From Macrostomum lignano (taxonomy: Eukaryota), in the NCBI GenBank assembly GCA_002269645.1, contig NIVC01000245.1:62001-126000 (forward strand): 64,000 nucleotides of DNA, written 5' to 3'. Each line of letters starts with the position of its first letter. Position 1 is the stretch's first letter. Below, piece after piece: positions 23,601-64,000 of the stretch. The translations under genes were made by a program, and so were the position numbers. The notes beneath the pieces were generated by a model that searched no databases, was not told where the DNA came from, and saw only the letters and a list, made by a program, of their open reading frames with translations.

Positions 23601-23965
23601 CGTGTCTATCTCCCTGTCGATCACCGTGTCTATCTCTCTGTCTATCTCCCTGTCTATCTCCCTCTCTATTTCCCTCTGTGTCTCCCTGTCCATCTCCATG
23701 TCTATCTCCCTGTCTATCTCCCTGTCTATCTCCCTCTCTATCTCCCTCTGTGTCTCCCTGTCTATCTCCATGTCTATCTCCCTGTCTATCTCCCTGTCTA
23801 TCTCCCTCTCTATCTCCCTCTGTGTCTCCCTGTCTATCTCCATGTCTATCTCCCTGTCTATCTCCCTGTCTATCTCCCTGTCTATCTCCCTCTCTATCTC
23901 CCTCTCTATCTCCCTCTGTGTCTCCCTGTCTATCTCCCTGTCTATCTTCCTCTGTGTCTCCCTCT
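20690..23965. repeat. 3.3-kb 12-bp array (TCCCTGTCTATC)n with higher-order variant blocks
   Basis: Tandem 12-mers with recurrent TAACACCGTG/TCGATCACCGTG marker blocks; source of the 1158-aa SISL pseudo-ORF. Confidence 0.97.
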
Positions 23966-30464: not shown

Positions 30465-30544
<80 letters not shown>

Positions 30545-33500
30545 GAGAAAGAAGAGAGGACAAAGGAGAGATGATAGAGTAAAGGGAAGAGGAGGAGAGA
30601 AAAAAGAGATGAGATTGTAGAGATGAGAGAGATGAAAGGAAAGATGAGAGAGTAGAGATGAGAGATGAAGGAAGAGAGAGCAGAGTGCAGAGAGACGAGA
30701 GAAGAGAATAGAGGGGAGAGAGTATAGAAGAGGGAAGAGAAGAGAGGAGTAAGGAAAGAGAGGAGTCAGAAGAGGGGAAAGAGAAGAGTACACAGTAGAG
30801 AGGAGAGTAGAGATGACAGAAGAGAGAGGGAAATGAGAGAGCAAAGATGAGAGTGAACAGACGATATAAGAGAGGAGAGAGGAGAGTGGAGAGAGAAGAG
30901 AGAAGACAAGAGAGGGAGAGAGTATAGAAGAGAGAAGAGAAGAGACGAGAAGAAAGAAGAAAGGAAAGAGAGTCCTGAGTCAAAAAGGGGAAAGAGAGGA
31001 GTACAAGAAGAGAGAGGTGAGAGAACATATGAGAGTAAAGATGACAGATGAGAGAGGGGAGATGAGAGAGCAGAAACCAGAGTGAACAGACGAGAGATGG
31101 GAGAGTAGAGAGAAGAGAGGAGAGATAAGAAATAAGAGATGAGATGTGGGGACAAGGGAGAGATGAGAAGTGAGTGAGGAGAGAGGAGGGGAAGGGAGAG
31201 AATTGAGAGGACAGGGGAAATTGGTGAAAAGGACGAGAGAGGAGAGGAAAGAGAGGAGAGATTAGAGAGAAGAGAGATAGGACAGGAGAGAGCAGAGAGA
31301 AGAGAGGAGAGAGAGAAGAGAGAAATGAGAAAAGATAAGAGAGAGAGAAGATAAAAGAAGAGAAATGAGATATAAGAGAGCGAAGACGAGAGAGAAGGGA
31401 GGTGAGAGAAAAGAATAGTGGGGAGAGGGAAGAGACGAGAGAAGAGGGGAGAGAGGAGAGAGGACAGAGAAGAGAAGAAAGAAGAGATAAGAGGAGAAAA
31501 AGAGGAGACGAGAGACGTGAGAGAAGATAGGAAACAGAAAAGAAGATGGAAGTTTTAAAGGATGCAAAGTACATAGGGAGAGGCAGAGGTAGAGGCCAGA
31601 GTTTGCCTGACATTCTGCGCAGCACCCCAGCCAACAATATCAATGTTTGCTTCAAATCCTAATTTTACACGAATTTATACTCTATTTTATGTTTAACTCC
31701 ATCCTAACTATTAACAAGTTTTTGTTTGAGTTTGACCTCAGATTTTAGATTACATGCAAAAATAATTCTGGGGAATGGAGTTCCCCGGGTTCAAAATCCG
31801 CGGGTTTCAACAGCTTGTTTTACTATATATTAAAGTGTATGCCAGTAAAATATGCCAATTCAGTGTTCAGTAAATTGTATACCAATTTGTATGATTAACA
31901 AGCATACAAACAATGCAACAAGCAATAAATATAAAAAAAATTGCTGCAGAAAAATGAATCCTTTAATTATAAAAATGGAACTAATTAGTAAAACAAAGTA
32001 ATTCTATTGTAGTGAAACTACAAGTAAGCTTGAAAAATATATTTTATGAGTTAAAAGATAAAAGGATTGGGGCAAGAAACTTAACTGCAAGAAAGAACTA
32101 TAAAAGGAAATTAATATATGGTAAAATCATGGCAAACCAAGCTGCAAAAAAGTACAACAAAATATCTATACTATATTATTGGGGGGGGGCAGGGGTAGCC
32201 CAGTGGTAGTTGGTAGTATAGCTGCTCTGCTGTGCTAGCGACCTAGGCTTGATTCAAAGTATAGTCACATTAATTTGGGGCTGAATTGTAATCTTGGAAT
32301 TGGAAGCTTAGTTCTGCTTGTGCAATTAACAGCCTTGAGAGCCAACCCCCGAAGGCGTAGTGAAGTGTACATGCCTAACGATAATATAAAGTTAGGGCTG
32401 CTGTACATTCCTGTGTGAGTATGTACTTGTGTACTGGTATATATCTGCATGCTTGTATGCCTGCTCAAAAGAGTTGGTAGAATAGGAAGTAATGCCTCTT
32501 GCCAGTTGTGTACCTATGTCGCTTAAAGTGCGCCAGGGTGCACACAACCCCCTGCCTCTAATAAAAAAATCTATATTATTGATTTAGGCAGATTTTTTAC
32601 TAATACTATAGAAAATTTGAGTAAATTATACAGTTTAGTTATATAGAAGATTTAAAAACCTAAATTATTGTCATAATTTTAAATTAGCTTTACTAAACAA
32701 TTTGTTAGTGTAATTTATGCAATAATATTTTATACTTCTATGCTTTTTGTTGCTATGCTGCAAGCTTGAACAAGTATAGTTAAGAATTTTAAGCCAATGA
32801 TTATGCTAGAAAGTTGTATAATGTATTTTGCTTCTTGTATGTCAGATGTATACTAGCCAAAGCATTTGAACCCTAGAATTTTCTCGAATATACTACACCT
32901 TCCACAATATGGTATAGCTTTGATTTATATAACTGTATTCAATCCAATGTATTTTAAAAAGATTAAGAGTTTGCTAGCTGTTAGACCTCTTATATTTGAC
33001 TAATATTAACAATAATAATCCTGTTTAATTACTTCTTTTGCAATATACAATAAATTCAAACCTATTTTTTCTATTCTTATATAGGTATACGAGCTATAAA
33101 GACCTATAAAAGAGGGAATTCTAAAGCTCTATATACACTTATGCCTATTTATATCTTTATAGGTAAATAATAACTAAAGTTATAGATTAGTAGTTTAATA
33201 GCAAAAATTATAGTTTAGTAGTTTTGATTTAAATCTACCAAAGAACTGCATTTAATATTTAGTTCATTTTATCACTTCTTTAAGTTAAGTCCCAATTGCA
33301 AAGTTATGTTTATGATAGAAAGTAGCACAATAATAAATAGTAATTTAGACTATTGAAAAAGCACAATAACTGATAAAGAAGTGATAAATATGGTCATGCA
33401 TGTTAAAATTGAAGTCTATTGTCAATTAGCTAGATTTTAATACTTTGTGTACTTTTTAATATTAAGTTATAATTCTATATTATTTTATTACTTTTACATA

Positions 33501-42770: not shown

Positions 42771-43706
42771 TTAGAAAATGTTAGCAAGGAACAGCAACCG
42801 CCTTCGGTCATACTCAGCCAGAATCAGATTAGCCTGATTACCCAACTCGATCAGGGCGACCCCAGAAGGCCTTTGAAGTGGGTTGCCTCCAGCATCCTGT
42901 AAGAAATTCTGCGAAACATTACCAGCAATGTCATAGACAGTGACAGAGTTGTTGGCGAACCCGCTAACGATCACGTGACCTTGGCTGTCTGCAGCAATCT
43001 GGCATAGCAGCGGTGAGCCGTCGATGGGTCCCGAGTGCTCTCTGAGATTCTGCAAGCCAATGCTTAACTTGAAGACGCGGCCGCTTCGATTGTCGCTCAT
43101 GAAGACGTCGTGCTCAGAAGCGGCAAGACTGCCGAGGTCCGACCCGACGAGCAGCGGCTCAGAGCTCAAGTTGACGATGCTCACTGCAGACAGCTGCTTG
43201 CTCAGCACCAGCAGTCGAGGTCCGCTCCGGTCCAGCAGCAAAATGCTGTCGTTGTTTCCAGCTACACCGCAGATGTTCAAAGAGTCGGCGCCTTCGTGCA
43301 GTCCGAGACGGTCGGCGCCGAGCTGCAGCGACACTCCGCCGCTGAGGTCCATCGCCGTGATTCGATCGGGCTGAGCCACGATCACCTGCTGCAGCTGCGA
43401 GTCCCAGTGCAGTCCCGTCACCTCCTTGTCCCAGTCGATGGAGTCGCAGTGAAGCTGGAACGGACCTGCCGAGCCATCCAGAGGCGACACAAGCAGGTAG
43501 TTAAAGATGCTCGGGTCGAATGACACCAGGACGCACGGCTGGGTCAGCGGCGATAAATATTGTTGAGTGCTGTCGGCGTCAGAGGCTCTGACCACTCGGC
43601 TGGACGAGTTGACAGCGAAGCCTCTTGTACAGGTGCACACAGCCAGCCGCTTGGGACTGGCCCTCAGAAAGTCGTGCTCAATTTTTGTGGACGATTGGTT
43701 AGGCAT
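42771..43706 (-). CDS. NHL-repeat / beta-propeller protein, copy A (311 aa, single exon, hydrophilic N-terminus)
   Basis: Intact ORF with NHL-like blades (QIAADSQGHVIVSGFANNSVTVYD; RPSGVAL...LILAEYDRRRLL). Paralogous to the adjacent plus-strand ORF. Confidence 0.75.
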   Translation of the reverse strand: MPNQSSTKIEHDFLRASPKRLAVCTCTRGFAVNSSSRVVRASDADSTQQYLSPLTQPCVLVSFDPSIFNYLLVSPLDGSAGPFQLHCDSIDWDKEVTGLHWDSQLQQVIVAQPDRITAMDLSGGVSLQLGADRLGLHEGADSLNICGVAGNNDSILLLDRSGPRLLVLSKQLSAVSIVNLSSEPLLVGSDLGSLAASEHDVFMSDNRSGRVFKLSIGLQNLREHSGPIDGSPLLCQIAADSQGHVIVSGFANNSVTVYDIAGNVSQNFLQDAGGNPLQRPSGVALIELGNQANLILAEYDRRRLLFLANIF

Positions 43707-43828: not shown

Positions 43829-44917
43829 ATGTTCTTTGAAAAGAAATTCCACGTGAAGCTGCATTTAGTGCGCCAGCCACTGTCAGAGCAGTTTTTGCTA
43901 GGGTTTTCTGCGGTGCTTGCTCTCTCTGTCTCTTTTGTAGCAGTTTATGCAAAGTGTAGACGGCTGGCTGTGTGCACCTGTACAAGAGGCTTCGCTGTCA
44001 ACTCGTCCAGCCGAGTGGTCAGAGCCTCTGACGCCGACAGCACTCAACAATATTTATCGCCGCTGACCCAGCCGTGCGTCCTGATGTCATTCGACCCGAG
44101 CATCTTCAACTACCTGCTTGTGTCGCCTCTGGATGGCGCGGCAGGTCCGTTCCAGCTTCACTGCGACTCCATCGACTGGGACAAGGAGGTGACGGGACTG
44201 CACTGGGACTCGCAGCTGCAGCAGGTGATCGTTGCTCAGCCCGATCGGATCACGGCGATGGACCTCAGCGGCGGAGTGTCGCTGCAGCTCGGCGCCGACC
44301 GTCTCGGACTGCGCGAGGGCGCCGACACTTTGGACATCTGCAGCGTAACTGGAAACAACGACAGCATTTTGCTGCTGGACCGGAGCGGACCTCGGCTGCT
44401 GGTGCTGAGCAAGCAGCTGTCTGCAGTGAGCATCGTCAACTTGAGCTTTGAGCCGCTGCTCATCGGGTCGGACCTCGGCAGTCTTGCCGCTTCTGAGCAC
44501 GACGTCTTCATGAGCGACAATCGAAGCGGCCGCGTCTTCAAGTTGAGTATTGGCTTGCAGAATCTCACAGAGCACTCGGGACCCATCAACGGCTCACCGC
44601 TGCTATGCCAGATTGCGGCAGACAGCCAAGGTCACGTGATCGTTAGCGGGTTCGCCAGCAACTCTGTCACTGTCTATGACATTGCTGGTAGTGTTTCGCA
44701 GAATTTGGTTGGCATTTTTTCTGCATGGCAACCTTTTAAGCTTCCGTCTGGCGTCGCGGTTTTCGAGTCCGACACTGGTATCACACTGCTCGTGTCCGAC
44801 TACGGTAGCAAAACTTTGTATGCGATTTCGTCTCCGTTTGATGAGTCTGACAAAGAAGTGGAGAAATTCTTGGGAATCTCCTTTTCCGAGGTGGTTAACT
44901 GTCGGTCCAGTGCCTAG
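43829..44917 (+). CDS. NHL-repeat / beta-propeller protein, copy B (362 aa, with an N-terminal hydrophobic segment)
   Basis: Intact ORF; 235 of 248 aa identical to copy A over RLAVCTC...VSQN; last blade KLPSGVAVFE...LLVSDYGSKTLY; N-terminal FLLGFSAVLALSVSFVAVYA followed by KCRR. The true start is uncertain because potential acceptors lie at 43940-43959. Confidence 0.7.
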   Translation: MFFEKKFHVKLHLVRQPLSEQFLLGFSAVLALSVSFVAVYAKCRRLAVCTCTRGFAVNSSSRVVRASDADSTQQYLSPLTQPCVLMSFDPSIFNYLLVSPLDGAAGPFQLHCDSIDWDKEVTGLHWDSQLQQVIVAQPDRITAMDLSGGVSLQLGADRLGLREGADTLDICSVTGNNDSILLLDRSGPRLLVLSKQLSAVSIVNLSFEPLLIGSDLGSLAASEHDVFMSDNRSGRVFKLSIGLQNLTEHSGPINGSPLLCQIAADSQGHVIVSGFASNSVTVYDIAGSVSQNLVGIFSAWQPFKLPSGVAVFESDTGITLLVSDYGSKTLYAISSPFDESDKEVEKFLGISFSEVVNCRSSA

Positions 44918-51059: not shown

Positions 51060-51970
51060 GACATCTTAGCAATCCCCTTTTGTAAGCCTTGACATCTCAG
51101 CAATTCCCTCCCCCACAAGCCTTGACATCTCAGCAATTCCCCTCCCCCATAAGCCTTGACATCTTAGCAATTCCCCTCCCCCATAAGCCTTGACATCTTA
51201 GCGATTCCCCTCTCCCCATAAGCCTTGACATCTTAGCAATTCCCCTCCCCCCACAAGATTTGACATCTTAGCAATTCCCCTCCCCCACAAGCCTTGACAT
51301 CTTAGCAATTCCCCTCCCCCATAAGCCTTGACATCTTAGCAATTCCCCTCCCCCATAAGCCTTGACATCTTAGCGATTCCCCTCCCCCATAAGCCTTGAC
51401 ATCTTAGCGATTCCCCTCCCCCATAAGCCTTGACATCTTAGCAATTCCCCTCCCCCATAAGCCTTGACATCTTAGCAATTCCCCTCCCCCATAAGCCTTG
51501 ACATCTTAGCGATTCCCCTCCCCCATAAGCCTTGACATCTTAGCGATTCCCCTCCCCCCATAAGCCTTGACATCTTAGCGATTCCCCTCCCCCATAAGCC
51601 TTGACATCTTAGCAATTCCCCTCCCCCATAAGCCTTGACATCTTAGCGATTCCCCTCCCCCATAAGCCTTGACATCTTAGCGATTCCCCTCCCCCCATAA
51701 GCCTTGACATCTTAGCGATTCCCCTCCCCCATAAGCCTTGACATCTTAGCGATTCCCCTCCCCCATAAGCCTTGACATCTTAGCGATTCCCCTCCCCCAT
51801 AAGCCTTGACATCTTAGCAATTCCCCTCCCCCATACCATAAGCCTTGACATCTTAGCGATTCCCCTCCCCCCATAAGCCTTGACATCTTAGCGATTCCCC
51901 TCCCCCCATAAGCCTTGACATCTAAGCAATTCCCCTCCCCCCATACCATAAGCCTTGACATCTTAGCAAT
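51060..51970. repeat. ~35-37-bp minisatellite (CCATAAGCCTTGACATCTTAGCGATTCCCCTCCCC)n upstream of shark
   Basis: Tandem copies. Confidence 0.95.
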
Positions 51971-52013
51971 TTTCTCAGCTTCTCTCAGCATCTCAGCTTA
52001 GATAAGCTGGGAG

Positions 52014-52199: not shown

Positions 52200-53139
52200 A
52201 TGAAGAGACACAAGGCACTAACTGGATTATTTAAACATCTCATGCAGCAGAAGCAGCGTCCATACTGGTTTCACGGCCAGTTGGGTCGCGAAGAAACTGA
52301 GCGTCGTTTACACGCTCAAGGCGGCCATGGCGACTATCTAGTTAGATATTCCAGCGCCACTGGCAAATATGTTCTGTCATTGCTGCACACTGACGGCTCG
52401 ATCTATCACTATCCAATTGATCGATTGGACGATGGTTTCTATCAATTAAGAGGAACTGAATCGAAATTTCTCGGCTTGGATTTGTTGCTAACTGATTTTA
52501 GTAGGGCTCTAGTTGAAGCATCGGGCGGCATTGTCAGACGGTTGGGTAGGCACGTACAAGCGCAGGAGCCTCCGCCCGCGGAGCTGATAGTCTATGGCAC
52601 AACCACCCCCCTGCACGAGGCTGTACGTCGCGGCGATACATTAGAAATTCGTCGCTTATTGTTAAGCTTGTTACAGTTGGCTAAGACTACTACTAGTACT
52701 AGTGGTCAGTTGTCAATATCTATTGTGAATGAGAAATCAGCAGATACCGGTTCTACAGCTTTGATTGATGCAGCTAAGACTGGCAATGCCGATTCTGTTA
52801 GACTGCTGTTGGAGGCTGGGGCAAATACGGCACTGTGGGACTGCGCTGGTTATTCTGCGTTGCATCGAGCTGCTCAGAAAGATTTTGTCAGCGTTGTGGA
52901 GCTGCTGCTCACGCTGGGGAAAGCTGATCCACAGGTTAGCTTTAGGTGGACAAAATCTGACACTTGAAAATGCTGTGGGAGAGTCAGGGTGCGAGTCAGG
53001 AGGTAGAAGAGTCAGGGGATGGCAGGATCAGGTAATGAGAGAGTCAGCTAAGAGAATCAGGGATAAGAGAGAGTCAGATGAGAGAACCAGAAATGAGAAT
53101 CGGAGAGAGAGCGATGAGAGAATCAACCACGAGACTCAA

Positions 53140-53174
<35 letters not shown>

Positions 53175-54307
53175 ATCAGGGATGAGACTTAGAGAGAGTC
53201 AGATGAGAGAATCAATCAGGGATGAGACTCAGAGAGAGTCAGATAAGAGAATCAGGGATGCGACACAGAGCTAGTCAGATGAGAGAATCAGGGATGACTC
53301 CGGATGAGACTCAGAGAGAGTCAGATGAGAGAATCAGGGATGAGACTCAGAGAGAGTCAAATGAGAGAATCAATCAGGGATGAAACACAGAGAGAGTCAG
53401 ATGAGAGAATCAATCAGGGATGAGACTCAGAGAGAGTCAAATGAGAGAATCAATCAGGGATGAAACACAGAGAGAGTCAGATGAGAGAATCAATCAGAGA
53501 TGAGACTCAGAGAGAGTCAGATGAGAGAATCAGGGATGAGACTCAGAGAGAGTCAAATGAGAGAATCAATCAGGGATGAAACACAGAGAGAGTCAGATGA
53601 GAGAATCAATCAGGGATGAGACTCAGAGAGAGTCAGATGAGAGAATCAATCAGGGATGAGACACAGAGAGAGTCAGATAAGAGAATCAGGAATGAGAGTT
53701 CGGGATGAGAGCTAGAGCCAGGGAAAGAATGTGAGAGTCAGAGAGGGCAAGGTAAAGTCAGAATGGGAAAAGGATAAGAAATATTTAGGCAAATTAACCC
53801 CTCCCCCAATTATCGTCCCCATCGCCGCGCAGATCCGCTGCCCCCTATCCGGCAACAGTCCCCTTCACGAGGCCGCCATTCTGGGCCACTCGAATTGCGC
53901 CAGTGCTCTGCTTCGCCACGGAGCTGCCGCGCATCCTTTGAACGCCGACGAGGAGATGCCCTACGAATTGGCGCTGAGATTCGGCTTCGCTGAGCTGGCA
54001 GATTATCTGGCTGATTGGCCAGCGGAGGAGCTGGAGGACGGGCTGGAGGATGGCGACTCGGAGGTGAGCTGTCTGCCTGTCTGCCTGTCTGTCTGTCTGC
54101 CTGTCTGTCTGCCTGCCTGTCTGCCTGTCTGTCTGTCTGCCTGTCTGCCTGTCTGCCTGTCTGTCTGTCTGTCTGTCTGCCTGTGCCTGTCTGCCTGTCT
54201 GTCTGTCTGCCTGTCTGCCTGTCTGTCTGCCTGTCTGTCTGTCTGTCTGTCTCCCTGTCTGCCTGTCTGTCTGTCTGCCTGTCTGTCTGTCTGTCTGTCT
54301 GCCTGCC

Positions 54308-54350
<43 letters not shown>

Positions 54351-57300
54351 CTGTCTCATAAAACTCCAATCCCCCCCAAAACCTCCTCACTGTCCTCAGT
54401 CGCACCTGCAGCGCCAGCTGTCCACCGCAGTGTGGTACCACCCCAGCCTCAGCCGCGCGGACACTGACGCGGCCATGAGGTCGCTGAGCAACCCGCCGCT
54501 AGACGGTGACTTTCTAGTTCGCTTGTCGACCTCCACAACCAGCGCGGCCGATGATTTCGACGATAGCGGCGCCTCTGCAGGCACGATTGCCGCTAGCCAT
54601 CGAAGCTTGCCTACAAATCCAATGTCCAGGCATCAGAAACGATTTGTACTCTGTTTAGCCAGCTCCGGTTCAGTGTATAAATACGCGATAGACTGCGATG
54701 CTGGCGCCTATCCGGTGTCTTCTACTGCTGCTGCAACTGTCGGTTTGCCTACTGGTCGAAGATTGCGAAGAAAACGGGACGCTTGGTACATTGGCGGCGG
54801 GCCAAGGCATCCGAGTCTGGGTGAGAAAGTCTGCAAGCTCATTGGCATAAGAGTCGGTGCTTCACTCTCAATATTATCGCCCCATTTAAAAATCGCCTTT
54901 CAAAATAGCCCTGCAGAATCGCCCCACTTCAGAATCGCCTCACTTAAGAATCGCCCCAATTAAGAATCGCCCCACTTAAGAATCGCACCACTTAAGAATC
55001 GCCCCACTTAAGAATCGCCACAATTAAGAATCGCCCCACTTAAGAATCGCCCCACTTAAGAATCGCCCCACTTAAGAATCGCCCCACTTAAGAATCGCCC
55101 CACTTAAGAATCGCCACAATTAAGAATCGCCCCACTTAAGAATCGCCCCACTAAAGAATCGCCCCAATTAAAAATAACCCCACTTAAGAATCGCCCCTGC
55201 AGAATCGTCCCTTCAGAAGAGCCCCTGCAGAATCGCCCTTCAGAATCACCCCTTCAGAATCGCCCCTGCAGAATCGCCCTTCAGAATCGCGCCCTCAGAA
55301 TTGCCCCTTTAGAATCGCCTCTTCAGAATCGCCCCTTCAGAATCGCCCCTGCAAAATCGCCCCTTTAGAATCGCCCCTTTAGAATCGCCCCTGTAGAATC
55401 GCCCCTGCAGAATCGCCCCTTCAGAAGCGCCCCTGCAGAATCGCCCCTTCAGAATCGCCCCTGCAGAATCGCCCTTCAGAATCACCCCTTCAGAATCGCC
55501 CCTGCAGAATCGCCCTTCAGAATCACCCCTTCAGAATCGCGCCTTCAGAATCGCGCCTTAAGAATCGCCCCTGCAGAATCGCCCCTTCAGAATCGCCCCT
55601 TCAGAATCGCGCCTTCAGAATCGCGCCTTCAGAATCGCGCCTTTAGAATCGCCCCTTCAGAATCGCCCCTTCAGAATCGCCCCTTCAGAATCGCCCCTTC
55701 AGAATCGCCCCTGTTGAATCGCCCCTGCAGAATCGCCCCTGCAGAATCGCCCCTGCAGAATCGCCCCTGCAGAATCGCCCCTGCAGAATCGCCCTTGCAG
55801 AATCGCCCCTTTAGAATCGCCCCTTCAAAATCGCGCCTTCAGAATCGCGCCTTCAGAATCGCGCCTTTAGAATCGCCCCTTCAGAATCGCCCCTTCAGAA
55901 TCGCCCCTTCAGAATCGCCCCTTCAGAATCGCCCCTTCAGAATCGCCCCTTCAGAATCGCCCCTGCAGAATCGCCCCTTTAGAATCGCCCCTTCAAAATC
56001 GCGCCTTCAGAATCGCGCCTTCAGAATCGCCCCTGCAGAATCGCCCCTTTAGAATCGCCCCTTCAAAATCGCGCCTTCAGAATCGCGCCTTCAGAATCGC
56101 GCCTTTAGAATCGCCCCTTCAGAATCGCCCTTTCAGAATCGCCCCTGCAGAATCGCCCCTGCAGAATCGCCCCTGCAGAATCGCCCTTGCAGAATCGGCC
56201 TTCAAAACAATCCAAACAAATGGCCCCTCTCATCGCGTCAACCGCAGGTCACCTAATCGACTATCTGACTCGCATCCCTGACGGAATTCCCTGCCGGCTT
56301 CAGCGCCCCATTCCGCCTAGTTCAGTTCGGCCAAGCTCTCACCACCAGCAGCTGGGATTAATCCCACTAAGCCAAGTGCTGCTATTGTCAAGAATTAGTG
56401 GCAACACAGCAGCAGAAATTGATATGTTCAACGGTCGTTTGTTATCTTCAACTACTACTATTAGTAGTAATAACAGTAGTAGTGCATCAAATTCAACAGC
56501 CAATGTTGCCATTAAAGTTCTAACGCCCAATGTCCGTTCATTTAACGATTCATCGAAAGCGCTAAAATCCCTAGCCGATGTGAAACTGTCTCAGCTGTCA
56601 CACAAGAGTCTAGTTGGCTTTGTTGGCATCTGTCTTGAATCGGCTAACAATAAACTCATGATACTCAATGAGCTCTGCTCCGTGGGTTCGGCCATAGACT
56701 ATGCAATCAGACAGTCGCCAGAATCTAAGCCGCTAGATTTGAGACGCTGGTGTGCTCAAGCTGCTCAAGGCATGGCCTATCTGGCCTCCAAAGGCTGTCG
56801 GCATGGTCGACTGAGTGCGAGGAATATTTTATTGACTGTCGGCACTGGGAGCGACTCCGGCGCTGACAAACTGGTCGCTAAAGTGTCCGACTTTGGATTG
56901 ACTGATTTGATGAGTACTGGATTTGATAAGTGAGTGAATAGATTCGTCCCAGATTTGTGATTTAAGTTTTTTCATTGTTTCAGATCCTAACTTAAGGATT
57001 TCAAACATCCCAGATCCTCATTTGAGGAGTTCAAACATCCCAGATCCTCATTTGAGGATTTCAAATGCCTCAGATCCTCATTTGAGGATTTTAAACATCC
57101 CAGATCCTCATTTGAGGAGTTCTAATATCCCAGATCCTCATTTGAGGATTTCAAACATCCCAGATCCTCATTTGAGGATTTCAAATGCCTCAGATCCTCA
57201 TTTGAGGATTTTAAACATCCCAGATCCTCATTTGAGGAGTTCTAATATCCCAGATCCTCATTTGAGGATTTCAAACATCCCAGATCCTCATTTGAGGATT

Positions 57301-58094
57301 TCAACTATCCCAGATCCTCATTTGAGGATTTCAACTATCCCAGATCCTCATTAGATTATTTCAACTATCCCAGATCCTCATTTGAGGATTTCAACTATCC
57401 CAGATCCTCATTTGAGGATTTCAAATGCCTCAGATCCTCATTTTAGGATTTCAAACATCCCAGATCCTCATTTGAGGATTTCAAACATCCCAGATCGTCA
57501 TTTGAGGATTTCAAATATCCCAGATCGTCTTTTAAGGATTTCAAACATACCAGATCGTCATTTGAGGATTTCAAGTATCCCAGATCCTCATTTGAGGATT
57601 TCAAATATCCCAGATCTTTATTTGAGGATTTCAACTATCCCAGATCCTCATTTGAGGATTTCAACTATCCCAGATCGTCATTTTCAAACCCCCTTTGAAA
57701 CCCTTTCAAATCCCAATTCGATTTCGATCTGCCCAGACACAACACTGCCCTGGAAGTTGGCCGCTGGTATCCACCTGAGCTACTCGAACTGGCCGTCTCG
57801 CTCTCCGATCCTCAACCTGCGACAGCCTCAACCGAGTCCACCGACGTTTGGAGTTTCGGCGTCTGCGTCTGGGAGCTGCACTGCTGTCGCCGCTATCCAG
57901 CTGGGCGGCCCACGCCGTGGCATGGCGCCGGCACTCCTGGCGCTGTTCTCAACCGTCTGCGTCGAGGAGATCGACTTGAACTGCCTGAACCCGCGGCAGC
58001 TGTGGTAGTTATCAAGGACGTCGTAGCGCGTTGCATGGCCGAGGCGGCGCCTCTGAGGCCGGGCTTTGAATGGATTGTGAAACGGTTGGCTTAG
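52200..58094 (+). CDS. shark: SHARK/HTK16-family SH2-ankyrin-SH2 tyrosine-kinase-fold protein, predicted pseudokinase; exons 52200-52934, 53833-54063, 54400-54820, 56248-56929, 57737-58094 (2427 nt, 808 aa)
   Basis: SH2 (WFHGQLGREE...GDYLVRYS), ankyrin repeats (TPLHEAVRRGD, TALIDAAKTGN, SALHRAAQKD, SPLHEAAILGH), second SH2 (WYHPSLSRAD...GDFLVRLS...HLIDYL) and kinase fold (VAIK, HGRLSARN, DFG, RWYPPE, DVWSFGV, RPGF). All introns are GT-AG with consistent phases. The SH2-ANK-SH2-kinase order is diagnostic of Shark/HTK16. Confidence 0.9.
52990..53705. repeat. 36-40-bp minisatellite (GAGAGAGTCAGATGAGAGAATCAATCAGGGATGAGACTCA)n in shark intron 1
   Basis: Tandem copies. Confidence 0.9.
54068..54355. 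repeat. (CTGT/CTGC)n microsatellite filling shark intron 2
   Basis: Tandem 4-mers. Confidence 0.95.
54905..56205. repeat. 14-16-bp minisatellite (AAGAATCGCCCCACTT, then AGAATCGCCCCT[T/G]C)n in shark intron 3
   Basis: The unit shortens from 16 to 14 bp along the array. Confidence 0.95.
56983..57682. repeat. 30-bp minisatellite (CAGATCCTCATTTGAGGATTTCAAACATCC)n in shark intron 4
   Basis: Tandem copies, most with an internal dyad ATCCTCA-TT-TGAGGAT. Confidence 0.95.
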
Positions 58095-59150
58095 AGGTAG
58101 GCAAGGGAGACTGAGAGGTAGGCAAGGAAGACTGAAAAGTAGGCAAAGGAGACTGAGAGGTAGGCAAGGGAGACTGAGAGGTAGGCAAGGGAGACTGAGA
58201 GGTAGGCAAGGGAGACTGAGAGGTAGACAAAGGGAGACTGAGAGGTAGACAAAGGGAGACTGAGAGGTAGACAAAGGGAGACTGAGAGGTAGACAAAGGG
58301 AGACTGAGAGGTAGACAAAGGGAGACTGAGAGGTAGACAAAGGGAGACTGAGAGTTAGACAAAGGGAGACTGAGAGGTAGACAAGGGAGACTGAGAGGTA
58401 GACAAGGGAGACTGAGAGGTAGGCAAGGGAGACTGAGAGGTAGACAAGGGAGACTGAGAGGTAGACAAAGGGAGACTGAGAGGTAGACAAAGGGAGACTG
58501 AGAGGTAGACAAAGGGAGACTGAGAGGTAGACAAAGGGAGACTGAGAGGTAGACAAAGGGAGACTGAGAGTTAGACAAAGGGAGACTGAGAGGTAGACAA
58601 AGGGAGACTGAGAGGTAGACAAGGGAGACTGAGAGGTAGACAAGGGAGACTGAGAGGTAGGCAAGGGAGACTGAGAGGTAGACAAGGGAGACTGAGAGGT
58701 AGACAAAGGGAGACTGAGAGGTAGACAAAGGGAGACTGAGAGGTAGGCAAGGGAGACTGAGAGGTAGACAAGGGAGACTGAGAGGTAGGCAAGGGAGACT
58801 GAGAGGTAGGCAAGGGAGACTGAGAGGTAGACAAGGGAGACTGAGAGGTAGGCAAGGGAGACTGAGAGGTAGACAAGGGAGACTGAGAGGTAGGCAAGGG
58901 AGACTGAGAGGTAGACAAGGGAGACTGAGAGGTAGGCAAGGGAGACTGAGAGGTAGGCAAGGGAGACTGAGAGGTAGACAAGGGAGACTGAGAGGTAGGC
59001 AAGGGAGACTGAGAGGTAGACAAGGGAGACTGAGAGGTAGACAAAGGGAGCCTGAGAGGTAGACAAAGGGAGACTGAGAGGTAGACAAGGGAGACTGAGA
59101 GGTAGGCAAGGTAGACAAAGGGAGACTGAGAGGTAAGCAAGAGACTGAAG
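58090..59150. repeat. 21-22-bp minisatellite (GAGAGGTAG[G/A]CAAGGGAGACT)n directly after the shark stop codon
   Basis: Tandem copies; source of the 465/429-aa antisense pseudo-ORFs. Confidence 0.95.
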
Positions 59151-59724
59151 TAAGAGATAGGCAGAGAGAATAAGATGTAGATAAAACATCTGCATCAATA
59201 AACCAAGAATGACAAGAAATATCATAGCAGCTTAACTTTATTGAAAACTGATGTATCGTGTTGCATAAAATTTCTGCTACAGATATCAGCGTCTCCTTCA
59301 ATACTAAAGGCTTCCTATATTATAAACAATCATTTTTACACTTTTTAATAGCTAAATATAAAAGTGATATTTTTTCTTGTCGTTCATTATTAATGCCGTG
59401 ATATAATCTGTTTTTCTACAACTCAATATTGTAGATATGATGTTTTATAAACAAACTAATCTGTTTCAGAATTGTTTACTTATCTTTTTTAACAGACGCT
59501 CTGCTTCTATTTAAAGAGTGTTTAACTTCCGTAACTTGTTTGGAAATTCTTCAATCTACTATTTAATCTGCATCTTGTGATTTTTCGCTGTGTCTATTTT
59601 AGATTCTAAGAAATACAATTATGTGATCATTGTTTGCTCATACCAGATATTTATGTTATTATAATCAAATTAACTCTTTGCGTTAAATTATTTGTTTTAA
59701 TTTCACTCTAGTTACATTTTACTC

Positions 59725-60470
59725 CCAGATCCTCAGCCACTGGGCCAGCCTCCCAGTTCGTCAGTTTCTTGGCCAGACTTCCAGATCCTCAGTTGCTGGG
59801 CCAGCCTCCCAGTTCGTCAGTTTCTTGGCCAGCCTTCCAGATCCTCAGTTGCTGGGCCAGCCTCCCAGATCCTCAGTTGCTGGGCCAGCCTCCCAGAATG
59901 TCAGTTGCTGGGCCAGCCTCCCAGAATGTCAGTTGCTGGGCCAGCCTCCCAGATCCTCAGTTGCTGGGCCAGCCTCCCAGAATGTCAGTTGCTGGGCCAG
60001 CCTCCCAGTTCGTCAGTTTCTTGGCCAGCCTCCCAGTTCGTCAGTCGCTGGGCCAGCCTCCCAGATCCTCAGTTGCTGGGCCAGCCTCCCAGAATGTCAG
60101 TTGCTGGGCCAGCCTCCCAGATCCTCAGTTGCTGGGCCAGCCTCCCAGAATGTCAGTTGCTGGGCCAGCCTCCCAGATCCTCAGTTGCTGGGCCAGCCTC
60201 CCAGAATGTCAGTTGCTGGGCCAGCCTCCCAGAATGTCAGTTGCTGGGCCAGCCTCCCAGAATGTCAGTTGCTAAGCCAGCCTCCCAGATCCTCAGTTGC
60301 TGGGTCAGCCTCCCAGATCCTCAGTTGCTGGGCCAGCCTCCCAGATCCTCAGTTGCTGGGCCAGCCTCCCAGATCCTCAGTTGCTGGGTCAGCCTCCCAG
60401 ATCCTCAGTTGCTGGGCCAGCCCCCCAGATCCTCAGCTGCTGGGCCACCCTCCCAGATCCTCAGTTGCTA
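59725..60470. repeat. 28-bp minisatellite (CCAGATCCTCAGTTGCTGGGCCAGCCTC)n upstream of TK2/dNK
   Basis: Tandem copies with three variants. Confidence 0.95.
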
Positions 60471-60511
60471 GGCATTCATCTGTAGACTTTCTTCATCAAA
60501 TCTTCCTACAG

Positions 60512-61804
60512 CAACAATGCTCAACTTTGCAGCTGCGCTGCGGAATCCGTCACCTAGCTGCCAGCATTCGATCTGGCCAATACAGATTGGCATCGTCAAT
60601 TGCTAGTGATACTACTAATAGAAGCAACAGTAGTAGTAGAAATGAAAGAATGTCATCTAGCCATAAGAAATTCACCGTATCAGTTGAAGGCAACATTGGT
60701 TCGGGCAAGAGCACTATGCTGGAGTATTTCTCGTCATTAAAATCAGCTCAGGGTATAGTTGAGTCCATACCCGAACCCATTGACAAGTGGTGCAACCTAG
60801 CCGGCGTAAATCTGTTAGAACGATTGTACACCGATCCTAAACGATGGTTCTTTTCGTTTAATTTGTACTGCATGCTGACTAGACTAGATATGCACCGGTT
60901 TGTCACACATCGGCCGGTGAAGATGCTGGAACGATCGGTGTACACCGCTCGGTTCTGTTTTATGACCAATGCCGTCAATCAGGGACTGTTGAATTCCGCT
61001 GAGATGCAGGTGCTGGATTGTTATTATCGCAGTCTGCTCACTGGACAGTGGGCTGAGCACCTTCGTGTGAGTGTTGAGCTCATTAATTTCTATCGTTACT
61101 TTGTTGTGAGCCATTCTATTTCTCTGTTATGAGCCATTCTATTTCTCTGTCATAAGCCATTCTATTTCTCTGTTATGAGCCATTTTATTTCTCTGTTGTG
61201 AGCCATTCTATTTCTCTATCGTAAGCCATTCTATTTCTGTCATGAGCCATTCTATTTCTCTGTCATAAGCCATTCTATTTCTCTGTTATGAGCCATTTTA
61301 TTTCTCTGTTGTGAGCCATTCTATTTCTCTATCGTAAGCCATTCTATTTCTGTCATGAGCCATTCTATTTCTCTGTCATGAGCCAATCTATTTCTCACCC
61401 TCTTTCTTCTATAAAATATCTTTCCAAATTTACATTACATTACACTCGCCTAACCACAAACCATCGCCAATCAGGTTGACCTCTATGTGTACCTTCGCTG
61501 CCCGCCCGAAATCTGTTTTAATCGCGTTAAACTTCGCAATCGAAGCGAAGAATCCGCAGGCGTAACTCTGTCTCTGTTGGAGAACCTGCACCAGCTGCAT
61601 GAGCAGTGGCTGCTCGATGACCAATCAGCTGATCGACCGAACGCTCCGGTTCTTGTGTTGGACGCCAGCCAAGATTTAAACGATATGAAGAGTCAGTGGG
61701 ACCGGCATATGCCTGCAATACTGTTTGATCAGCACCTGTCCAAGGATAGTTGTCTTGGCAACCAGAAGCCAGGTTATGTGCTGGCTAAAAGTTGCGACTC
61801 TTAA
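60512..61804 (+). CDS. TK2: Deoxynucleoside kinase (TK2 / Drosophila dNK family); exon 1 ends at 61066, exon 2 is 61475-61804; first in-frame ATG after the minisatellite at 60650, with an upstream in-frame presequence-like extension from 60512/60533
   Basis: P-loop VEGNIGSGKST, EPIDKW, ERS motif (MLERSVYTARFCF), LID-like YLRCPPEICFNRVKLRNRSEE. Intron CGT|GTGAGT ... AATCAG|GTT is phase 0. Confidence 0.92.
61110..61395. repeat. ~23-bp minisatellite (AGCCATTCTATTTCTCTGTTATG)n in the TK2/dNK intron
   Basis: Tandem copies. Confidence 0.9.
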
Positions 61805-61857: not shown

Positions 61858-63385
61858 AAACGGGTGGTTCTAATAGTGAACAGGTGGTTCTGGGAGTGAA
61901 CAGGTGGTTCTAGTAGTGAACAGGTGGTTCTGGGAGTGAACAGGTGGTTCTAGTAGTGAACAGGTGGTTCTAGTAGTGAACAGGTGGTTCTAGTAGTGAA
62001 CAGGTGGTTCTAGTAGTGAACAGGTGGTTCTAGTAGTGAACAGGTGGTTCTAGTAGTGAACAGGTGGTTCTAGTAGTGAACAGGTGGTTCTAGTAGTGAA
62101 CAGGTGGTTCTAGTAGTGAACAGGTGGTTCTAGTAGTGAACAGGCAGTTCTGGGAGTGAACAGGTGGTTCTGAGAGTGAACAGATGGTTCTGAGAGTGAA
62201 CAGATGGTTCTGGGAGTGAACAGGTGGTTCTAGTAGTGAACAGGTGGTTCTAGTAGTGAACAGGTGGTTCTAGTAGTGAACAGGTGGTTCTAGTAGTGAA
62301 CAGGTGGTTCTAGTAGTGAACAGGTGGTTCTAGTAGTGAACAGGTGGTTCTAGTAGTGAACAGGCAGTTCTGGGAGTGAACAGGTGGTTCTGAGAGTGAA
62401 CAGATGGTTCTGAGAGTGAACAGATGGTTCTGGGAGTGAACAGGTGGTTCTAGTAGTGAACAGGTGGTTCTAGTAGTGAACAGGTGGTTCTAGTAGTGAA
62501 CAGGTGGTTCTAGTAGTGAACAGGCAGTTCTGGGAGTGAACAGGTGGTTCTGAGAGTGAACAGATGGTTCTGAGAGTGAACAGATGGTTCTGGGAGTGAA
62601 CATGTGGTTCTGGGAGTGAACAGGTGGTTCTGAGAGTGAACAGGTAGTTCTGAGAGTGAACAGATGGTTCTGAGAGTGAACATGTGGTTCTGGGAGTGAA
62701 CAGGTGGTTCTGAGAGTGAACAGGTAGTTTTGAGAGTGAACAGGTAGTTCTGGGAGTGAACAGGTGGTTCTGGGAGTGAACAGGTGGTTCTAGTAGTGAA
62801 CAGGTGGTTCTAGTAGTGAACAGGCAGTTCTGGGAGTGAACAGGTGGTTCTGAGAGTGAACAGATGGTTCTGAGAGTGAACAGATGGTTTTAGTAGTGAA
62901 CAGGTGGTTCTAGTAGTGAACAGGTGGTTCTAGTAGTGAACAGGTGGTTCTAGTAGTGAACAGGTGGTTCTAGTAGTGAACGGGTGGTTCTAGTAGTGAA
63001 CAGGTGGTTCTAGTAGTGAACAGGTGGTTCTAGTAGTGAACAGGTGGTTCTAGTAGTGAACAGGTGGTTCTAGGAGTGAACAGGTGGTTCTGAGAGTGAA
63101 CAGGTGGTTCTGAGAGTGAACAGATGGTTCTGGGAGTGAACAGGTGGTTCTGGGAGTGAACAGGTGGTTTTGAGAGTGAACAGGTGGTTCTGAGAGTGAA
63201 CAGGTGGTTTTGAGAGTGAACAGGTAGTTCTGGGAGTGAACAGGTGGTTCTGAGAGTGAACAGGTGGTTCTGAGAGTGAACAGGTAGTTCTGAGAGTGAA
63301 CAGGTTGTTCTGGGAGTGAGCAGGTAGTTCTGAGAGTGAACAGGTGGTTCTGGGAGTGAGCAGGTGGTTCTGGGAGTGAACAGAT
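61858..63385. repeat. 20-bp minisatellite (GTGAACAGGTGGTTCT + AGTA/GGGA/GAGA)n downstream of TK2/dNK
   Basis: About 75 units with interspersed variants. Confidence 0.97.
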
Positions 63386-64000
63386 GATTCCGAGAGTGAG
63401 CAGCTTTTTAAATTTATAACCTATTTGTTATATTTTGTTAAACCTGGTGATGGAATGGACAGTGAGCTTTACTTAGCAGTCAATCATTAATATTGCAATT
63501 GTTATAATTTTTTAGAGTTGATAATTTTATTGGCGTACTAATTAATATTAATAATATTAATAATACTAAAATCATGACTTTATTTTTTGGCACATGAACT
63601 TGCACTCTTTTCACTATTTTTGGTGTTGTTTTTGATAATATTTTCTAGCCATTCTCTAGCATACGCAATCACTGTCACTAAATTAGTCAACCAATATGAC
63701 CACTAAGTTTTATTCTAGCATCCAATGCATTGTTGTGCAGCAATTGTAGGGGTTGAGCTATTTTATGATGATACTGAAATAAATTTGAATTTATTTTTCT
63801 TCTACTATGTCCATATTTTTGCAAAGCAATTGCAAAGCAAAGCAATTTTCAAATAATTACAGTAGCTTGAAAGCGAATATCTGTCTTGTATATTGGATAT
63901 ACTTGAAAACTCGATTAAAACGCCAATCGTTAATCACACCATCTTTTCTGGGGCAATATTCAGTTGGCAAGCAATTATTCATTTCCGCTCTAAGTCTGAG

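What the first reader, a model, noticed from the sequence alone, without database searches (positions are those of the whole stretch)
56248..58094. SHARK/HTK16-type protein with intact SH2 domains but a dead-looking kinase domain (pseudokinase)
Seen: the gene splices into an uninterrupted 808-aa SH2-ANK-SH2-kinase ORF. In the kinase fold the catalytic loop is HGRLSARN rather than HRDLAARN (catalytic Asp replaced by Arg). The Gly-rich loop is degenerate (SRISGNTAAEIDMFNG), the alphaC region has no Glu (RSFNDSSKALKSLADVKLSQLSH), and the activation segment (DFGLTDLMSTGFDKHNTALEVGRWYPPE) has no Tyr before RW. The VAIK Lys, catalytic-loop Asn, DFG, DVWSFG and both SH2 (F/Y)LVR arginines are retained. 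Known: Drosophila Shark is an active Syk-like kinase that binds the phosphorylated Draper ITAM in engulfment; HG-type catalytic loops occur in JAK JH2 pseudokinases. Inference: this is a preserved, catalytically inactive Shark paralog that could act as a pTyr-binding decoy or scaffold in phagocytosis or epithelial signalling. I know of no described Shark pseudokinase.
Basis: partly seen in the sequence, partly recalled or inferred. Interest (0 to 1): 0.78.

Follow-up and report, generated by a model that had tools for sequence, protein, structure and literature searches.

The report
Kinase-dead Shark/HTK16 paralog in a flatworm
The flatworm Macrostomum lignano carries, beside a normal Shark/HTK16 tyrosine kinase, an expressed and selectively maintained sister gene that keeps the phosphotyrosine-docking domains but has lost the catalytic machinery; this looks like the first predicted pseudokinase in this kinase family.

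Summary
Five GT-AG exons (52200-58094, + strand) splice into an 808-aa SH2-ankyrin-SH2-tyrosine-kinase protein. It matches the RNA-seq-derived GenBank model BOX15_Mlig000491g2 of Macrostomum lignano exactly.

It is not an assembly error. Three genomic copies and models from an independent assembly all show HGR.

The same genome holds a canonical paralog, Mlig008106g2, with all catalytic motifs intact. That paralog is the ortholog of the HTK16 genes of parasitic flatworms.

Loss of constraint is confined to the kinase domain:
- Tajima relative-rate test: 52-54 versus 14-16 unique changes (p about 1e-5 to 1e-6).
- 23 of 73 family-invariant kinase positions are lost, against 0 of 36 in the SH2 and ankyrin domains.

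The kinase domain is still predicted to fold well (pTM 0.78). Among the copies it evolves with omega about 0.3 (p = 7e-4 against neutrality). The best reading is a functional pseudokinase that docks through its tandem SH2 domains.

Whether it acts as a decoy or a scaffold is untested. The Draper link is weak, because flatworms lack Draper. The C-terminal SH2 carries two large disordered insertions. No ortholog was found outside M. lignano, and no Shark pseudokinase was found in the literature. Interest is moderate.

The parts
52200..52934 (+). Exon 1 (aa 1-245): N-terminal SH2 (aa 23-96, nt 52266-52487), linker, and the first ankyrin repeats (from aa 133, nt 52596)
   Evidence: ORF and GT donor; Pfam SH2 and Ank. 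The best solved-structure matches are the ZAP-70 and Syk tandem SH2 domains, with R29, R49 and H70 at the pTyr-pocket positions. AF2 pLDDT is 72-81 for the SH2 and 85-97 for the ANK region.
53833..54063 (+). Exon 2 (aa 246-322): last ankyrin repeats (to aa 305, nt 54012) and an acidic window-specific linker insertion (EELEDGLEDGDSE)
   Evidence: The intron 1 position and phase (GxxxPQ|xRCP, phase 0) are shared with the canonical paralog.
54400..54820 (+). Exon 3 (aa 323-462): most of the C-terminal SH2 (from aa 333, nt 54430), including FLVR R362. It carries a 33-aa disordered insertion in the BC loop (aa 368-400, nt 54535-54633) and a second insertion at aa 428-447.
   Evidence: The SH2 core has pLDDT 83-87 and the insertions 26-47.
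56248..56929 (+). Exon 4 (aa 463-690): end of the C-SH2 (to aa 480, nt 56300), a short interdomain linker, the kinase-like N-lobe, the catalytic loop and the start of the activation segment
   Evidence: The intron 3 position and phase (|HLxxxL, phase 1) are shared with the paralog.
56397..56414 (+). Degenerate Gly-rich loop S513-G-N-T-A-A518 (family consensus GxGxFG), followed by a 2-aa insertion and then a 12-aa Ser/Thr-rich insertion
   Evidence: G->S513, G->N515
56514..56516 (+). Retained beta3 lysine K552 (VAIK)
   Evidence: K in 30/30 homologs and in the window
56802..56825 (+). Catalytic loop H648-G-R-L-S-A-R-N655. HRD Arg->Gly649 and catalytic Asp->Arg650; Asn655 is retained.
   Evidence: The same sequence is found in all copies.
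56889..56897 (+). Retained DFG (D677 F678 G679)
57737..58094 (+). Exon 5 (aa 690-808 plus stop): rest of the activation segment, with the family YY replaced by non-tyrosine residues (F688-D689 or K690-H691, depending on the alignment) and a 4-aa deletion of the 'KWPx' P+1 loop; PPE (to nt 57779) instead of APE; C-lobe with DVWSFG; two loop insertions; CW->CM
   Evidence: The intron 4 position and phase (phase 2, in the codon after the YY position) are shared with the paralog. AF2 C-lobe pLDDT is about 90.
52935..57736 (.). Four introns (52935-53832, 54064-54399, 54821-56247, 56930-57736), each filled by its own minisatellite with a 40-, 8-, 14- or 30-nt unit

Best explanation
The locus encodes a functional pseudokinase member of the Shark/HTK16 family (Syk-related, SH2-ANK-SH2-kinase).

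Shown:
- It arose by DNA-level duplication of the flatworm HTK16 gene. Three intron positions and phases are shared with the canonical paralog.
- The canonical copy (Mlig008106g2) stayed a normal kinase.
- In this copy only the kinase domain accelerated. It lost the catalytic base (HRD Asp->Arg650), the Gly-rich loop glycines, the alphaC Glu, the activation-loop tyrosines and four residues of the P+1 substrate loop.
- It kept the fold-determining residues: K552, H648, N655, DFG, DVWSFG and the R-spine residues.
- Every family-invariant residue of the two SH2 domains and the ankyrin repeats is kept.
- It is transcribed at a low level with no body-region bias.
- Its near-identical genomic copies differ mainly by synonymous changes.

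Inferred:
- The protein cannot phosphorylate substrates.
- It is still recruited through its tandem SH2 module to doubly tyrosine-phosphorylated (ITAM-like) motifs. These would be the same class of site that recruits the active paralog.
- There it acts without catalysis. Either it competes with the active HTK16 (a natural dominant-negative or decoy), or it brings its ankyrin and pseudokinase surfaces as a scaffold or allosteric partner. The data cannot separate these two.
- The basic Arg650 at the catalytic-Asp position, as with Lys331 in the HGK motif of human MLKL, might allow cation-independent nucleotide binding. This is speculation.
For: - Gene model and domains.
- Identity with the RNA-seq-derived GenBank model, and how that annotation was made.
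- Expression: Mlig_37v3 entry Mlig000491.g5 has length 2382 nt, equal to the 793-codon CDS plus stop. Its read counts are 58/29/38/38, its class is 'Non-Specific', and its DESeq baseMean is about 25.
- Motif losses against 30 tyrosine kinases and against 8 canonical Sharks.
- Canonical paralog in the same genome.
- The acceleration is specific to the kinase domain. Identity to P0086 is SH2a 60%, ANK 60%, SH2b 49% and kinase 37%. Identity to 7 non-flatworm Sharks is 31% (window) against 46% (P0086) in the kinase and equal elsewhere. Tajima test: m1=52-54 vs m2=14-16, p about 1e-5 to 1e-6 in the kinase, with no window-specific acceleration elsewhere. Family-invariant columns kept: 12/12, 13/13 and 11/11 against 50/73.
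- The NJ terminal branch of the kinase is 1.0 against 0.23.
- Purifying selection among the three copies: kinase 17 synonymous / 15 nonsynonymous changes, omega about 0.30, p=6.6e-4. Whole gene p=6.7e-6. Flanking non-coding DNA is only 91-97% identical, against 97-99.9% for exons.
- Fold retained: AF2 pLDDT 77, pTM 0.78. Foldseek top hits are tyrosine-kinase domains with TM 0.75-0.84.
- SH2 and ANK folds retained.
- Shared introns.
- Precedent for a basic residue at the HRD-Asp position (MLKL HGK): PMC4718504.
Against: - No biochemical data exist. Some proteins lacking canonical residues keep weak activity.
- The window keeps K552, N655 and the DFG Asp, so nucleotide binding and a residual or atypical activity are not excluded.
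- The selection test rests on only 32 substitutions in the kinase exons, among copies that may undergo gene conversion. Four of the 15 nonsynonymous changes lie in a low-complexity insertion.
- One of the three copies (L002) has a disrupted 5' end and a 1-nt deletion.
- No ortholog from another species was found. Long-term conservation of the degenerate kinase domain is therefore not shown.
- The 33-aa insertion sits in the phosphate-binding BC loop of the C-SH2 and could impair bidentate pTyr binding.
- No binding partner is known, and Draper is reported absent from flatworms.
Confidence: 0.72

Rival explanations
1. An atypical but still active kinase: catalysis is rescued by other residues, or the domain has a new substrate class, as in weakly active 'pseudokinases' such as HER3 or JAK2 JH2.
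For: K552, N655 and D677-F-G are retained, along with the regulatory-spine residues H648, F678, L576 and the alphaF Asp726. The domain is under purifying selection and is predicted to fold well.
Against: The losses are multiple and concerted. They are the catalytic base Asp->Arg, all three Gly-loop glycines, the alphaC Glu, both activation-loop Tyr, the invariant Pro of the P+1 loop plus a 4-aa deletion there, and APE->PPE. In HER3 and JH2 the substitution at the base position is Asn. Here it is a bulky cation.
Confidence: 0.12
2. A decaying duplicate: a transcribed pseudogene on its way to loss, with no function of its own.
For: The kinase domain evolves fast. There are many low-complexity insertions. 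One genomic copy (L002) has a frameshift and a damaged 5' end. Expression is low. No ortholog was found elsewhere.
Against: The 808-codon ORF and all splice sites are intact in two copies. Synonymous changes are in significant excess. All 36 family-invariant SH2/ANK positions and 50 of 73 kinase positions are retained. The predicted fold is confident. With about one replacement per site on the kinase branch, an open frame would not survive neutral drift (inference). A similar single-base gap occurs in a copy of the canonical paralog, so the L002 indel may be a long-read assembly error.
Confidence: 0.1
3. An artefact: a mis-assembly, sequencing error or wrong splice model creates the HGR loop.
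For: The assembly is repeat-rich and redundant (PMC5730564). The introns are full of minisatellites.
Against: The same HGRLSARN codons occur in three loci and in models from a second source. The splice model equals the transcript-derived CDS. The deviations are spread over the whole domain, not confined to one site.
Confidence: 0.01

Closest known systems
Shark (Drosophila) / HTK16 (Hydra) family of Syk-related cytoplasmic tyrosine kinases; nearest member is M. lignano BOX15_Mlig008106g2 (PAA89541.1), followed by the HTK16 proteins of Clonorchis, Schistosoma, Echinococcus and Fasciola
   Same: It has the same SH2-ankyrin-SH2-kinase architecture. It sits inside the flatworm HTK16 clade with 100% bootstrap support on the N-terminal domains. 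Three intron positions are shared with the canonical paralog. All family-invariant SH2/ANK residues are kept.
   Different: All other members examined have HRDLA(A/C/T)RN, GxGxFG, the alphaC Glu, YY and WYAPE. These were 8 in the alignment, 9 neodermatan sequences, and every SH2-ANK-SH2 protein checked among the best-scoring representatives. This protein has none of those motifs. It also has extra disordered insertions in the C-SH2 and in kinase loops.
JAK-family JH2 pseudokinase domains (catalytic loop HGN)
   Same: A tyrosine-kinase-fold domain with Gly at the HRD Arg position and no catalytic Asp. JAK1 and TYK2 JH2 align to the window's loop (HGNVCTKN / HGNVCGRN versus HGRLSARN). JAK2 JH2 is among the structural matches.
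   Different: JH2 sits in cis next to an active JH1 in the same polypeptide and regulates it. Here the pseudokinase is the only kinase-like domain, and the active counterpart is a separate paralogous gene. There is no specific sequence relationship: identity is about 25-30%, as with any tyrosine kinase.
MLKL pseudokinase (human catalytic loop HGK)
   Same: A basic residue occupies the catalytic-Asp position. In human MLKL, Lys331 of HGK contributes to cation-independent ATP binding (PMC4718504).
   Different: It belongs to an unrelated kinase group (TKL) with a different domain context. MLKL also lacks DFG, whereas this protein keeps it.
Syk / ZAP-70
   Same: These are the closest solved structures for both SH2 domains and among the best for the kinase domain. 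They share the tandem-SH2 logic of docking to doubly phosphorylated ITAMs.
   Different: Ankyrin repeats replace interdomain A. Interdomain B has no regulatory tyrosines. The kinase domain is degenerate.

Membership tests
Shark/HTK16 family | N-terminal SH2 domain with pTyr-pocket residues | tested here: met
   Pfam SH2 at 23-96. It aligns to the ZAP-70 and Syk SH2 domains with R29, R49 (YLVR) and H70 in place. 12/12 family-invariant columns are kept.
Shark/HTK16 family | Ankyrin repeats between the two SH2 domains | tested here: met
   Pfam Ank/Ank_2 over aa 138-300. 13/13 invariant columns are kept. AF2 pLDDT is 85-97.
Shark/HTK16 family | Second SH2 domain before the kinase | tested here: met
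   Second Pfam SH2 stretch. R341, R362 (FLVR) and S364 are present and 11/11 invariant columns are kept. The core fold has pLDDT 83-87. Caveat: there are two disordered insertions (aa 368-400 in the BC loop, and aa 428-447). Ligand binding was not tested.
Shark/HTK16 family | Phylogenetic placement inside the family | tested here: met
   The NJ bootstrap for the flatworm HTK16 clade including the window is 100% on the N-terminal domains and 79-82% on the kinase domain. These are distance trees only.
Shark/HTK16 family | Catalytically competent tyrosine-kinase domain (HRDLAARN, GxGxFG, alphaC Glu, activation-loop YY, WYAPE) | tested here: not met
   The window has HGRLSARN, SGNTAA, no Glu, non-tyrosine residues for YY, a 4-aa P+1 deletion and WYPPE. 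It is therefore a divergent, non-catalytic member by descent, not a functional Shark kinase.
Pseudokinase (sequence definition) | Protein-kinase fold lacking at least one of the beta3 Lys, the HRD Asp or the DFG Asp | tested here: met
   The kinase fold is confirmed by Pfam (E=5e-38) and by AF2/Foldseek. The HRD Asp is Arg650, while K552 and D677 are present.
Pseudokinase (functional definition) | No phosphotransfer activity; nucleotide-binding class | not testable with these tools
   This needs a recombinant-protein kinase assay and a thermal-shift or nucleotide-binding assay.
JAK JH2-type pseudokinase | Pseudokinase domain in tandem with an active kinase domain in one polypeptide, with FERM-SH2 upstream | tested here: not met
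   There is a single kinase-like domain and the architecture is SH2-ANK-SH2.

The most novel reading that the evidence does not exclude
The kinase-dead Shark is not a recent Macrostomum oddity. It is an ancient flatworm paralog that split from HTK16 before Macrostomorpha and the lineage leading to Neodermata diverged, as the N-terminal NJ trees suggest (88-93% bootstrap). It has been kept for hundreds of millions of years as a dedicated non-catalytic regulator (antagonist or adaptor) of ITAM-type phosphotyrosine signalling, in a phylum that has lost Draper. It would then be the first natural 'tandem-SH2 pseudokinase' of the Syk/Shark superfamily, and a handle on the kinase-independent functions of these proteins.
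Probability: 0.25. Interest if true: 0.65.

Novelty: new variant of a known kind. Interest (0 to 1): 0.5.

Why it matters
Syk-family kinases (Syk, ZAP-70, Shark/HTK16) are the universal readers of ITAM-type phosphotyrosine signals in immunity and engulfment. All described members are active enzymes.

A naturally kinase-dead member that keeps the tandem-SH2 reader and is held under selection would show that this family, like JAK, ErbB and RIPK/MLKL, has produced a non-catalytic regulator. It would also offer a natural experiment on scaffold versus catalytic roles.

M. lignano has RNAi and transgenesis (PMC5730564). The decoy and scaffold hypotheses are therefore directly testable next to the active paralog in the same animal. 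The find also flags a gene that automatic annotation currently names 'Tyrosine-protein kinase'.

The significance has limits. Pseudokinases make up about a tenth of kinomes. The gene is so far seen in one species, and no phenotype or partner is known.

Tried and rejected
- Looked for orthologs of the HGR form in other species. Three word-indexed searches (C-half, family profile, N-half) and one exhaustive HMMER search of 1.84 billion representatives found only M. lignano copies. A cross-species dN/dS was therefore impossible.
- Looked for other non-HRD Shark-architecture proteins among the best-scoring representatives and the flatworm HTK16s. None were found.
- Literature searches for a Shark/HTK16 pseudokinase returned nothing relevant. 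The Kwon et al. 2019 pseudokinase survey is not held.
- Searched for the gene ID in supplements. It is absent from those of Wudarski 2017 and the 2026 aneuploidy paper. It was found only, as Mlig000491.g5, in Brand 2020. The ID-to-gene match there rests on CDS length and is an inference.
- Tried to settle the alphaC Glu position by alignment. Three alignments give three answers (L571, A572, D573), and the structure tool returns no coordinates, so a K552-D573 salt bridge could not be checked.
- Tried to resolve the true start codon (M1, M15 or a spliced-leader AUG). This is not resolved.
- Considered an assembly error, a wrong splice model and a retained intron as the source of the SH2 insertion. 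These were rejected because the transcript-derived CDS contains the same sequence.
- Could not make a meaningful dN/dS comparison with the canonical paralog. Its copies differ at only about 6 of 2364 nt.
Full report
**What is there**

The window is eukaryotic DNA with short exons separated by introns full of minisatellites. Five + strand exons have canonical GT..AG borders: 52200-52934, 53833-54063, 54400-54820, 56248-56929 and 57737-58094. They join into a 2427-nt ORF encoding 808 aa.

Pfam finds two SH2 stretches, ankyrin repeats (aa 138-300) and a tyrosine-kinase domain (aa 541-807, E=5e-38). The finding's coordinates are exactly exons 4-5.

A protein search identifies the gene as Macrostomum lignano BOX15_Mlig000491g2 (PAA87163.1). 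That model is 100% identical to mine over its 793 residues. The GenBank annotation of this assembly was derived from a genome-guided RNA-seq transcriptome (PMC5730564). The splice model is therefore transcript-supported.

In the re-annotated transcriptome used by Brand et al. 2020, an entry Mlig000491.g5 of 2382 nt has the length of the 793-codon CDS plus stop. Its read counts are 58/29/38/38 in four body fragments, its class is 'Non-Specific', and its DESeq baseMean is about 25 (PMC7336406). That means low, ubiquitous expression. The identification of this entry with the gene rests on length and is an inference.

**The observation**

In an alignment with 30 tyrosine-kinase homologs:
- The catalytic Asp column is D in 30/30, and the window has Arg650.
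- The preceding Arg is Gly649.
- The three Gly-loop glycines are Ser513, Asn515 and Ala518.
- The activation-loop Tyr is Phe688.
- The invariant Pro of the P+1 loop is Val.
- APE is PPE.
- K552, N655 and D677-F-G are retained.

No alphaC Glu exists. Alignments place the family Glu opposite L571, A572 or D573, so only a neighbouring Asp is available.

The feature is not an assembly error. Two further genomic loci carry the same HGRLSARN: L001 (Mlig008176g1) and L002 (Mlig019422g1). So do four protein models from another source.

**A canonical paralog in the same genome**

An exhaustive HMMER search of 1.84 billion representatives gave one outstanding relative, P0086 (E=7e-42). This is M. lignano BOX15_Mlig008106g2, 787 aa. 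It has the same SH2-ANK-SH2-kinase architecture and fully canonical motifs: LGEGEFGEV, VAVK, KEAAVM, IHRDLAARN, DFG, DYYRA and WYAPE. It also exists in three near-identical copies.

A family-profile search then recovered HTK16 orthologs from Clonorchis, Schistosoma, Echinococcus, Fasciola, Spirometra and others. Among the nine full-length or near-full-length ones put into the tree, eight show HRDLACRN; the ninth, a 674-aa fragment, gave no motif match. They are 53-56% identical to P0086. There is a second, active-looking Shark, and it is the one orthologous to other flatworms' HTK16.

**Where the divergence lies** (alignment, counts)

| Region | Identity to P0086 | Mean identity to 7 non-flatworm Sharks (window / P0086) | Family-invariant columns kept |
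|---|---|---|---|
| N-SH2 | 60% | 34% / 29% | 12/12 |
| ANK | 60% | 35% / 36% | 13/13 |
| C-SH2 | 49% | 33% / 31% | 11/11 |
| Kinase | 37% | 31% / 46% | 50/73 |

- Tajima's relative-rate test gives 52-54 window-unique against 14-16 paralog-unique changes in the kinase domain (p=3e-6 to 1e-5, four outgroups). The other three domains show no window-specific acceleration; the only significant result there (N-SH2, one of four outgroups, p=0.004) runs in the opposite direction.
- The 23 lost kinase invariants include G513S, G515N, the alphaC Glu, R649G, D650R, R682D, the two YY positions, A702P and W790M.
- The window also has a 4-aa deletion of the 'KWPx' P+1 loop and several loop insertions.
- In NJ trees its kinase terminal branch is 1.0 against 0.23 for the paralog.

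The change of constraint is thus confined to the catalytic domain. The targeting domains evolve at the normal family rate.

**Is it maintained?**

The three genomic copies allow a small selection test. On the star tree the counts are:

| Region | Synonymous | Nonsynonymous | omega | Binomial p for synonymous excess |
|---|---|---|---|---|
| Kinase exons | 17 | 15 | about 0.30 | 6.6e-4 |
| N-terminal part | 8 | 4 | about 0.17 | 0.0026 |
| Whole gene | 25 | 19 | about 0.25 | 6.7e-6 |

- Exons are 97-99.9% identical between copies, whereas the flanking non-coding DNA is 91-97% identical with many gaps.
- AlphaFold2 predicts a confident kinase fold (pLDDT 77, pTM 0.78, C-lobe about 90). Low confidence is limited to the insertions. 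Foldseek's best PDB matches are tyrosine-kinase domains with target TM 0.75-0.84.
- The structural residues of the regulatory spine and the alphaF Asp are all present.

Together this argues for a folded, selected, non-catalytic domain rather than a decaying one. There are caveats:
- Few substitutions are available.
- Gene conversion between the copies is possible.
- Copy L002 has a damaged 5' end and a 1-nt deletion in exon 3.
- A similar single-base gap in a copy of the canonical paralog suggests that such indels may be long-read assembly errors.

**The SH2 module**

The N-SH2 aligns to ZAP-70 and Syk with the pocket residues R29, R49 and H70.

The C-SH2 keeps R341, FLVR R362 and S364. The betaD4 residue is Lys, as in the canonical paralog. 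It carries a 33-aa insertion in the BC loop (aa 368-400, with a DDFDD stretch) and a 20-aa insertion at aa 428-447. AlphaFold2 models the core at pLDDT 83-87 and both insertions as disordered, at 26-47.

'Intact SH2 domains' is therefore true for the cores. The phosphate-binding loop of the second SH2 is unusual, and its ligand binding must be tested.

**Origin**

The window gene and the canonical paralog share three intron positions with identical phase:
- after GxxxPQ (phase 0);
- before HLxxxL (phase 1);
- in the codon after the YY position (phase 2).

They differ in four others. P0086 has extra introns after aa 92, 163 and 543, and the window has one after aa 322. This indicates a DNA-level duplication followed by long divergence.

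In NJ bootstrap analyses the window protein is inside the flatworm HTK16 clade (100%). It lies outside the group P0086 + Neodermata, with 88-93% support on the N-terminal domains and 75% on the kinase domain. The N-terminal domains of the two paralogs evolve at equal rates. This topology therefore suggests that the duplication predates the split between Macrostomorpha and the lineage leading to Neodermata. Distance trees with one long branch are not decisive, however.

No ortholog of the HGR form was found in any other species. The databases seem to hold few free-living flatworms.

**Mechanism**

The best-supported reading is a pseudokinase that is still targeted by a Syk-type tandem SH2 reader to doubly phosphorylated motifs and that acts without phosphotransfer. 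It would either compete with the active HTK16 paralog or serve as a scaffold or allosteric partner through its ankyrin and pseudokinase surfaces.

The recruitment step and the inactivity are inferred from sequence. Decoy versus scaffold is open.

A published survey found no Draper/MEGF10/11 ortholog in triclads, polyclads or M. lignano, although planarians do have shark (PMC7059952).

A basic residue at the HRD-Asp position has a precedent in human MLKL, whose HGK Lys331 helps cation-independent ATP binding (PMC4718504). Whether Arg650 does something similar is speculation.

**Comparison and novelty**

By descent and architecture the protein is a Shark/HTK16-family member. By the family's catalytic hallmarks it is not a functional kinase. 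It meets the sequence definition of a pseudokinase.

It resembles JAK JH2 in the HG-type loop, but it is a stand-alone paralog, not a cis-regulatory domain. Every SH2-ANK-SH2 protein checked among the best-scoring representatives has HRD, as do eight of the nine neodermatan HTK16 proteins examined; the ninth is a fragment with no motif match. Full-text searches found no Shark/HTK16 pseudokinase.

The gene is already in GenBank and UniProt, annotated as 'hypothetical protein' or 'Tyrosine-protein kinase'. I therefore rate it a new variant of a known kind. It is real, coherent and testable in a tractable animal. It is of moderate rather than high surprise, because lineage-specific pseudokinase paralogs are common and nothing is yet known of its partners or phenotype.

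Noticed in passing
window 51083-51971, 53152-53688, 54069-54356, 54891-56197, 56981-57683, 58093-59116, 59722-60473, 61859-63403: Each intron and both flanks of the gene are occupied by a different minisatellite, with units of 34, 40, 8, 14, 30, 21, 28 and 20 nt and up to 91 copies. The 21-mer array begins at the stop codon. This fits the reported 15% simple/tandem repeat content of the M. lignano genome (PMC5730564).
   Followed up: partly
window about 60473-61132 (+); L001 26164-27878; L002 16119-17503: A deoxynucleoside kinase gene (Pfam dNK, E=1.8e-25) lies just downstream in all three copies. UniProt models P0003 and P0004 fuse the last Shark-like exon to dNK. These are either chimeric predictions or traces of a polycistronic pre-mRNA in this trans-splicing species.
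   Followed up: partly
L002 7760-7800 and 9780-10199; L005 exon 1: Copy L002 of the gene has a rewritten start region (ATGCTAAAAAATGA...) that gives an in-frame stop before codon 4. It also has a 1-nt deletion in an AAA run of exon 3. A copy of the canonical paralog (L005) likewise has a 1-nt gap in exon 1. These are either real pseudogenised copies or long-read indel errors.
   Followed up: partly
window exons 1-3 versus exons 4-5, compared with L001 and L002: Synonymous divergence among the three copies is about 3-4 times higher in the kinase exons (17 changes per 232 synonymous sites) than in the N-terminal exons (8 per 360), Fisher p=0.003. The canonical paralog's copies differ at only about 6 of 2364 nt. 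Gene conversion or a mosaic copy history is possible, but this remains unexplained.
   Followed up: partly
window 52200-52245: The GenBank CDS is 5'-partial and starts at Gln16, right after Met15. UniProt models from another assembly read Gln instead of Met at position 15. The M. lignano spliced leader ends in ...GCATG (PMC8629364), so an SL-donated start codon is conceivable. The true start was not resolved.
   Followed up: partly
L001 13595-24360: Intron 4 is about 10.8 kb in copy L001, against 0.8 kb in the window. There has been a large insertion or repeat expansion in one copy.
   Followed up: no
window 4404-6821 (-): A single-exon 805-aa ORF encodes a C2H2 zinc-finger protein (Pfam zf-C2H2, E=6e-30) with proline- and glutamine-rich low-complexity regions.
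   Followed up: no
window 42771-43706 (-) and 43829-44917 (+): Two divergently oriented ORFs of 311 and 362 aa encode closely similar proteins with no Pfam match. They form a head-to-head local duplication.
   Followed up: no
window 20600-24100 and 30000-31700: Kilobase-scale strand-asymmetric simple repeats (GC skew down to -0.64 and up to +0.66) create long spurious ORFs in several frames.
   Followed up: no
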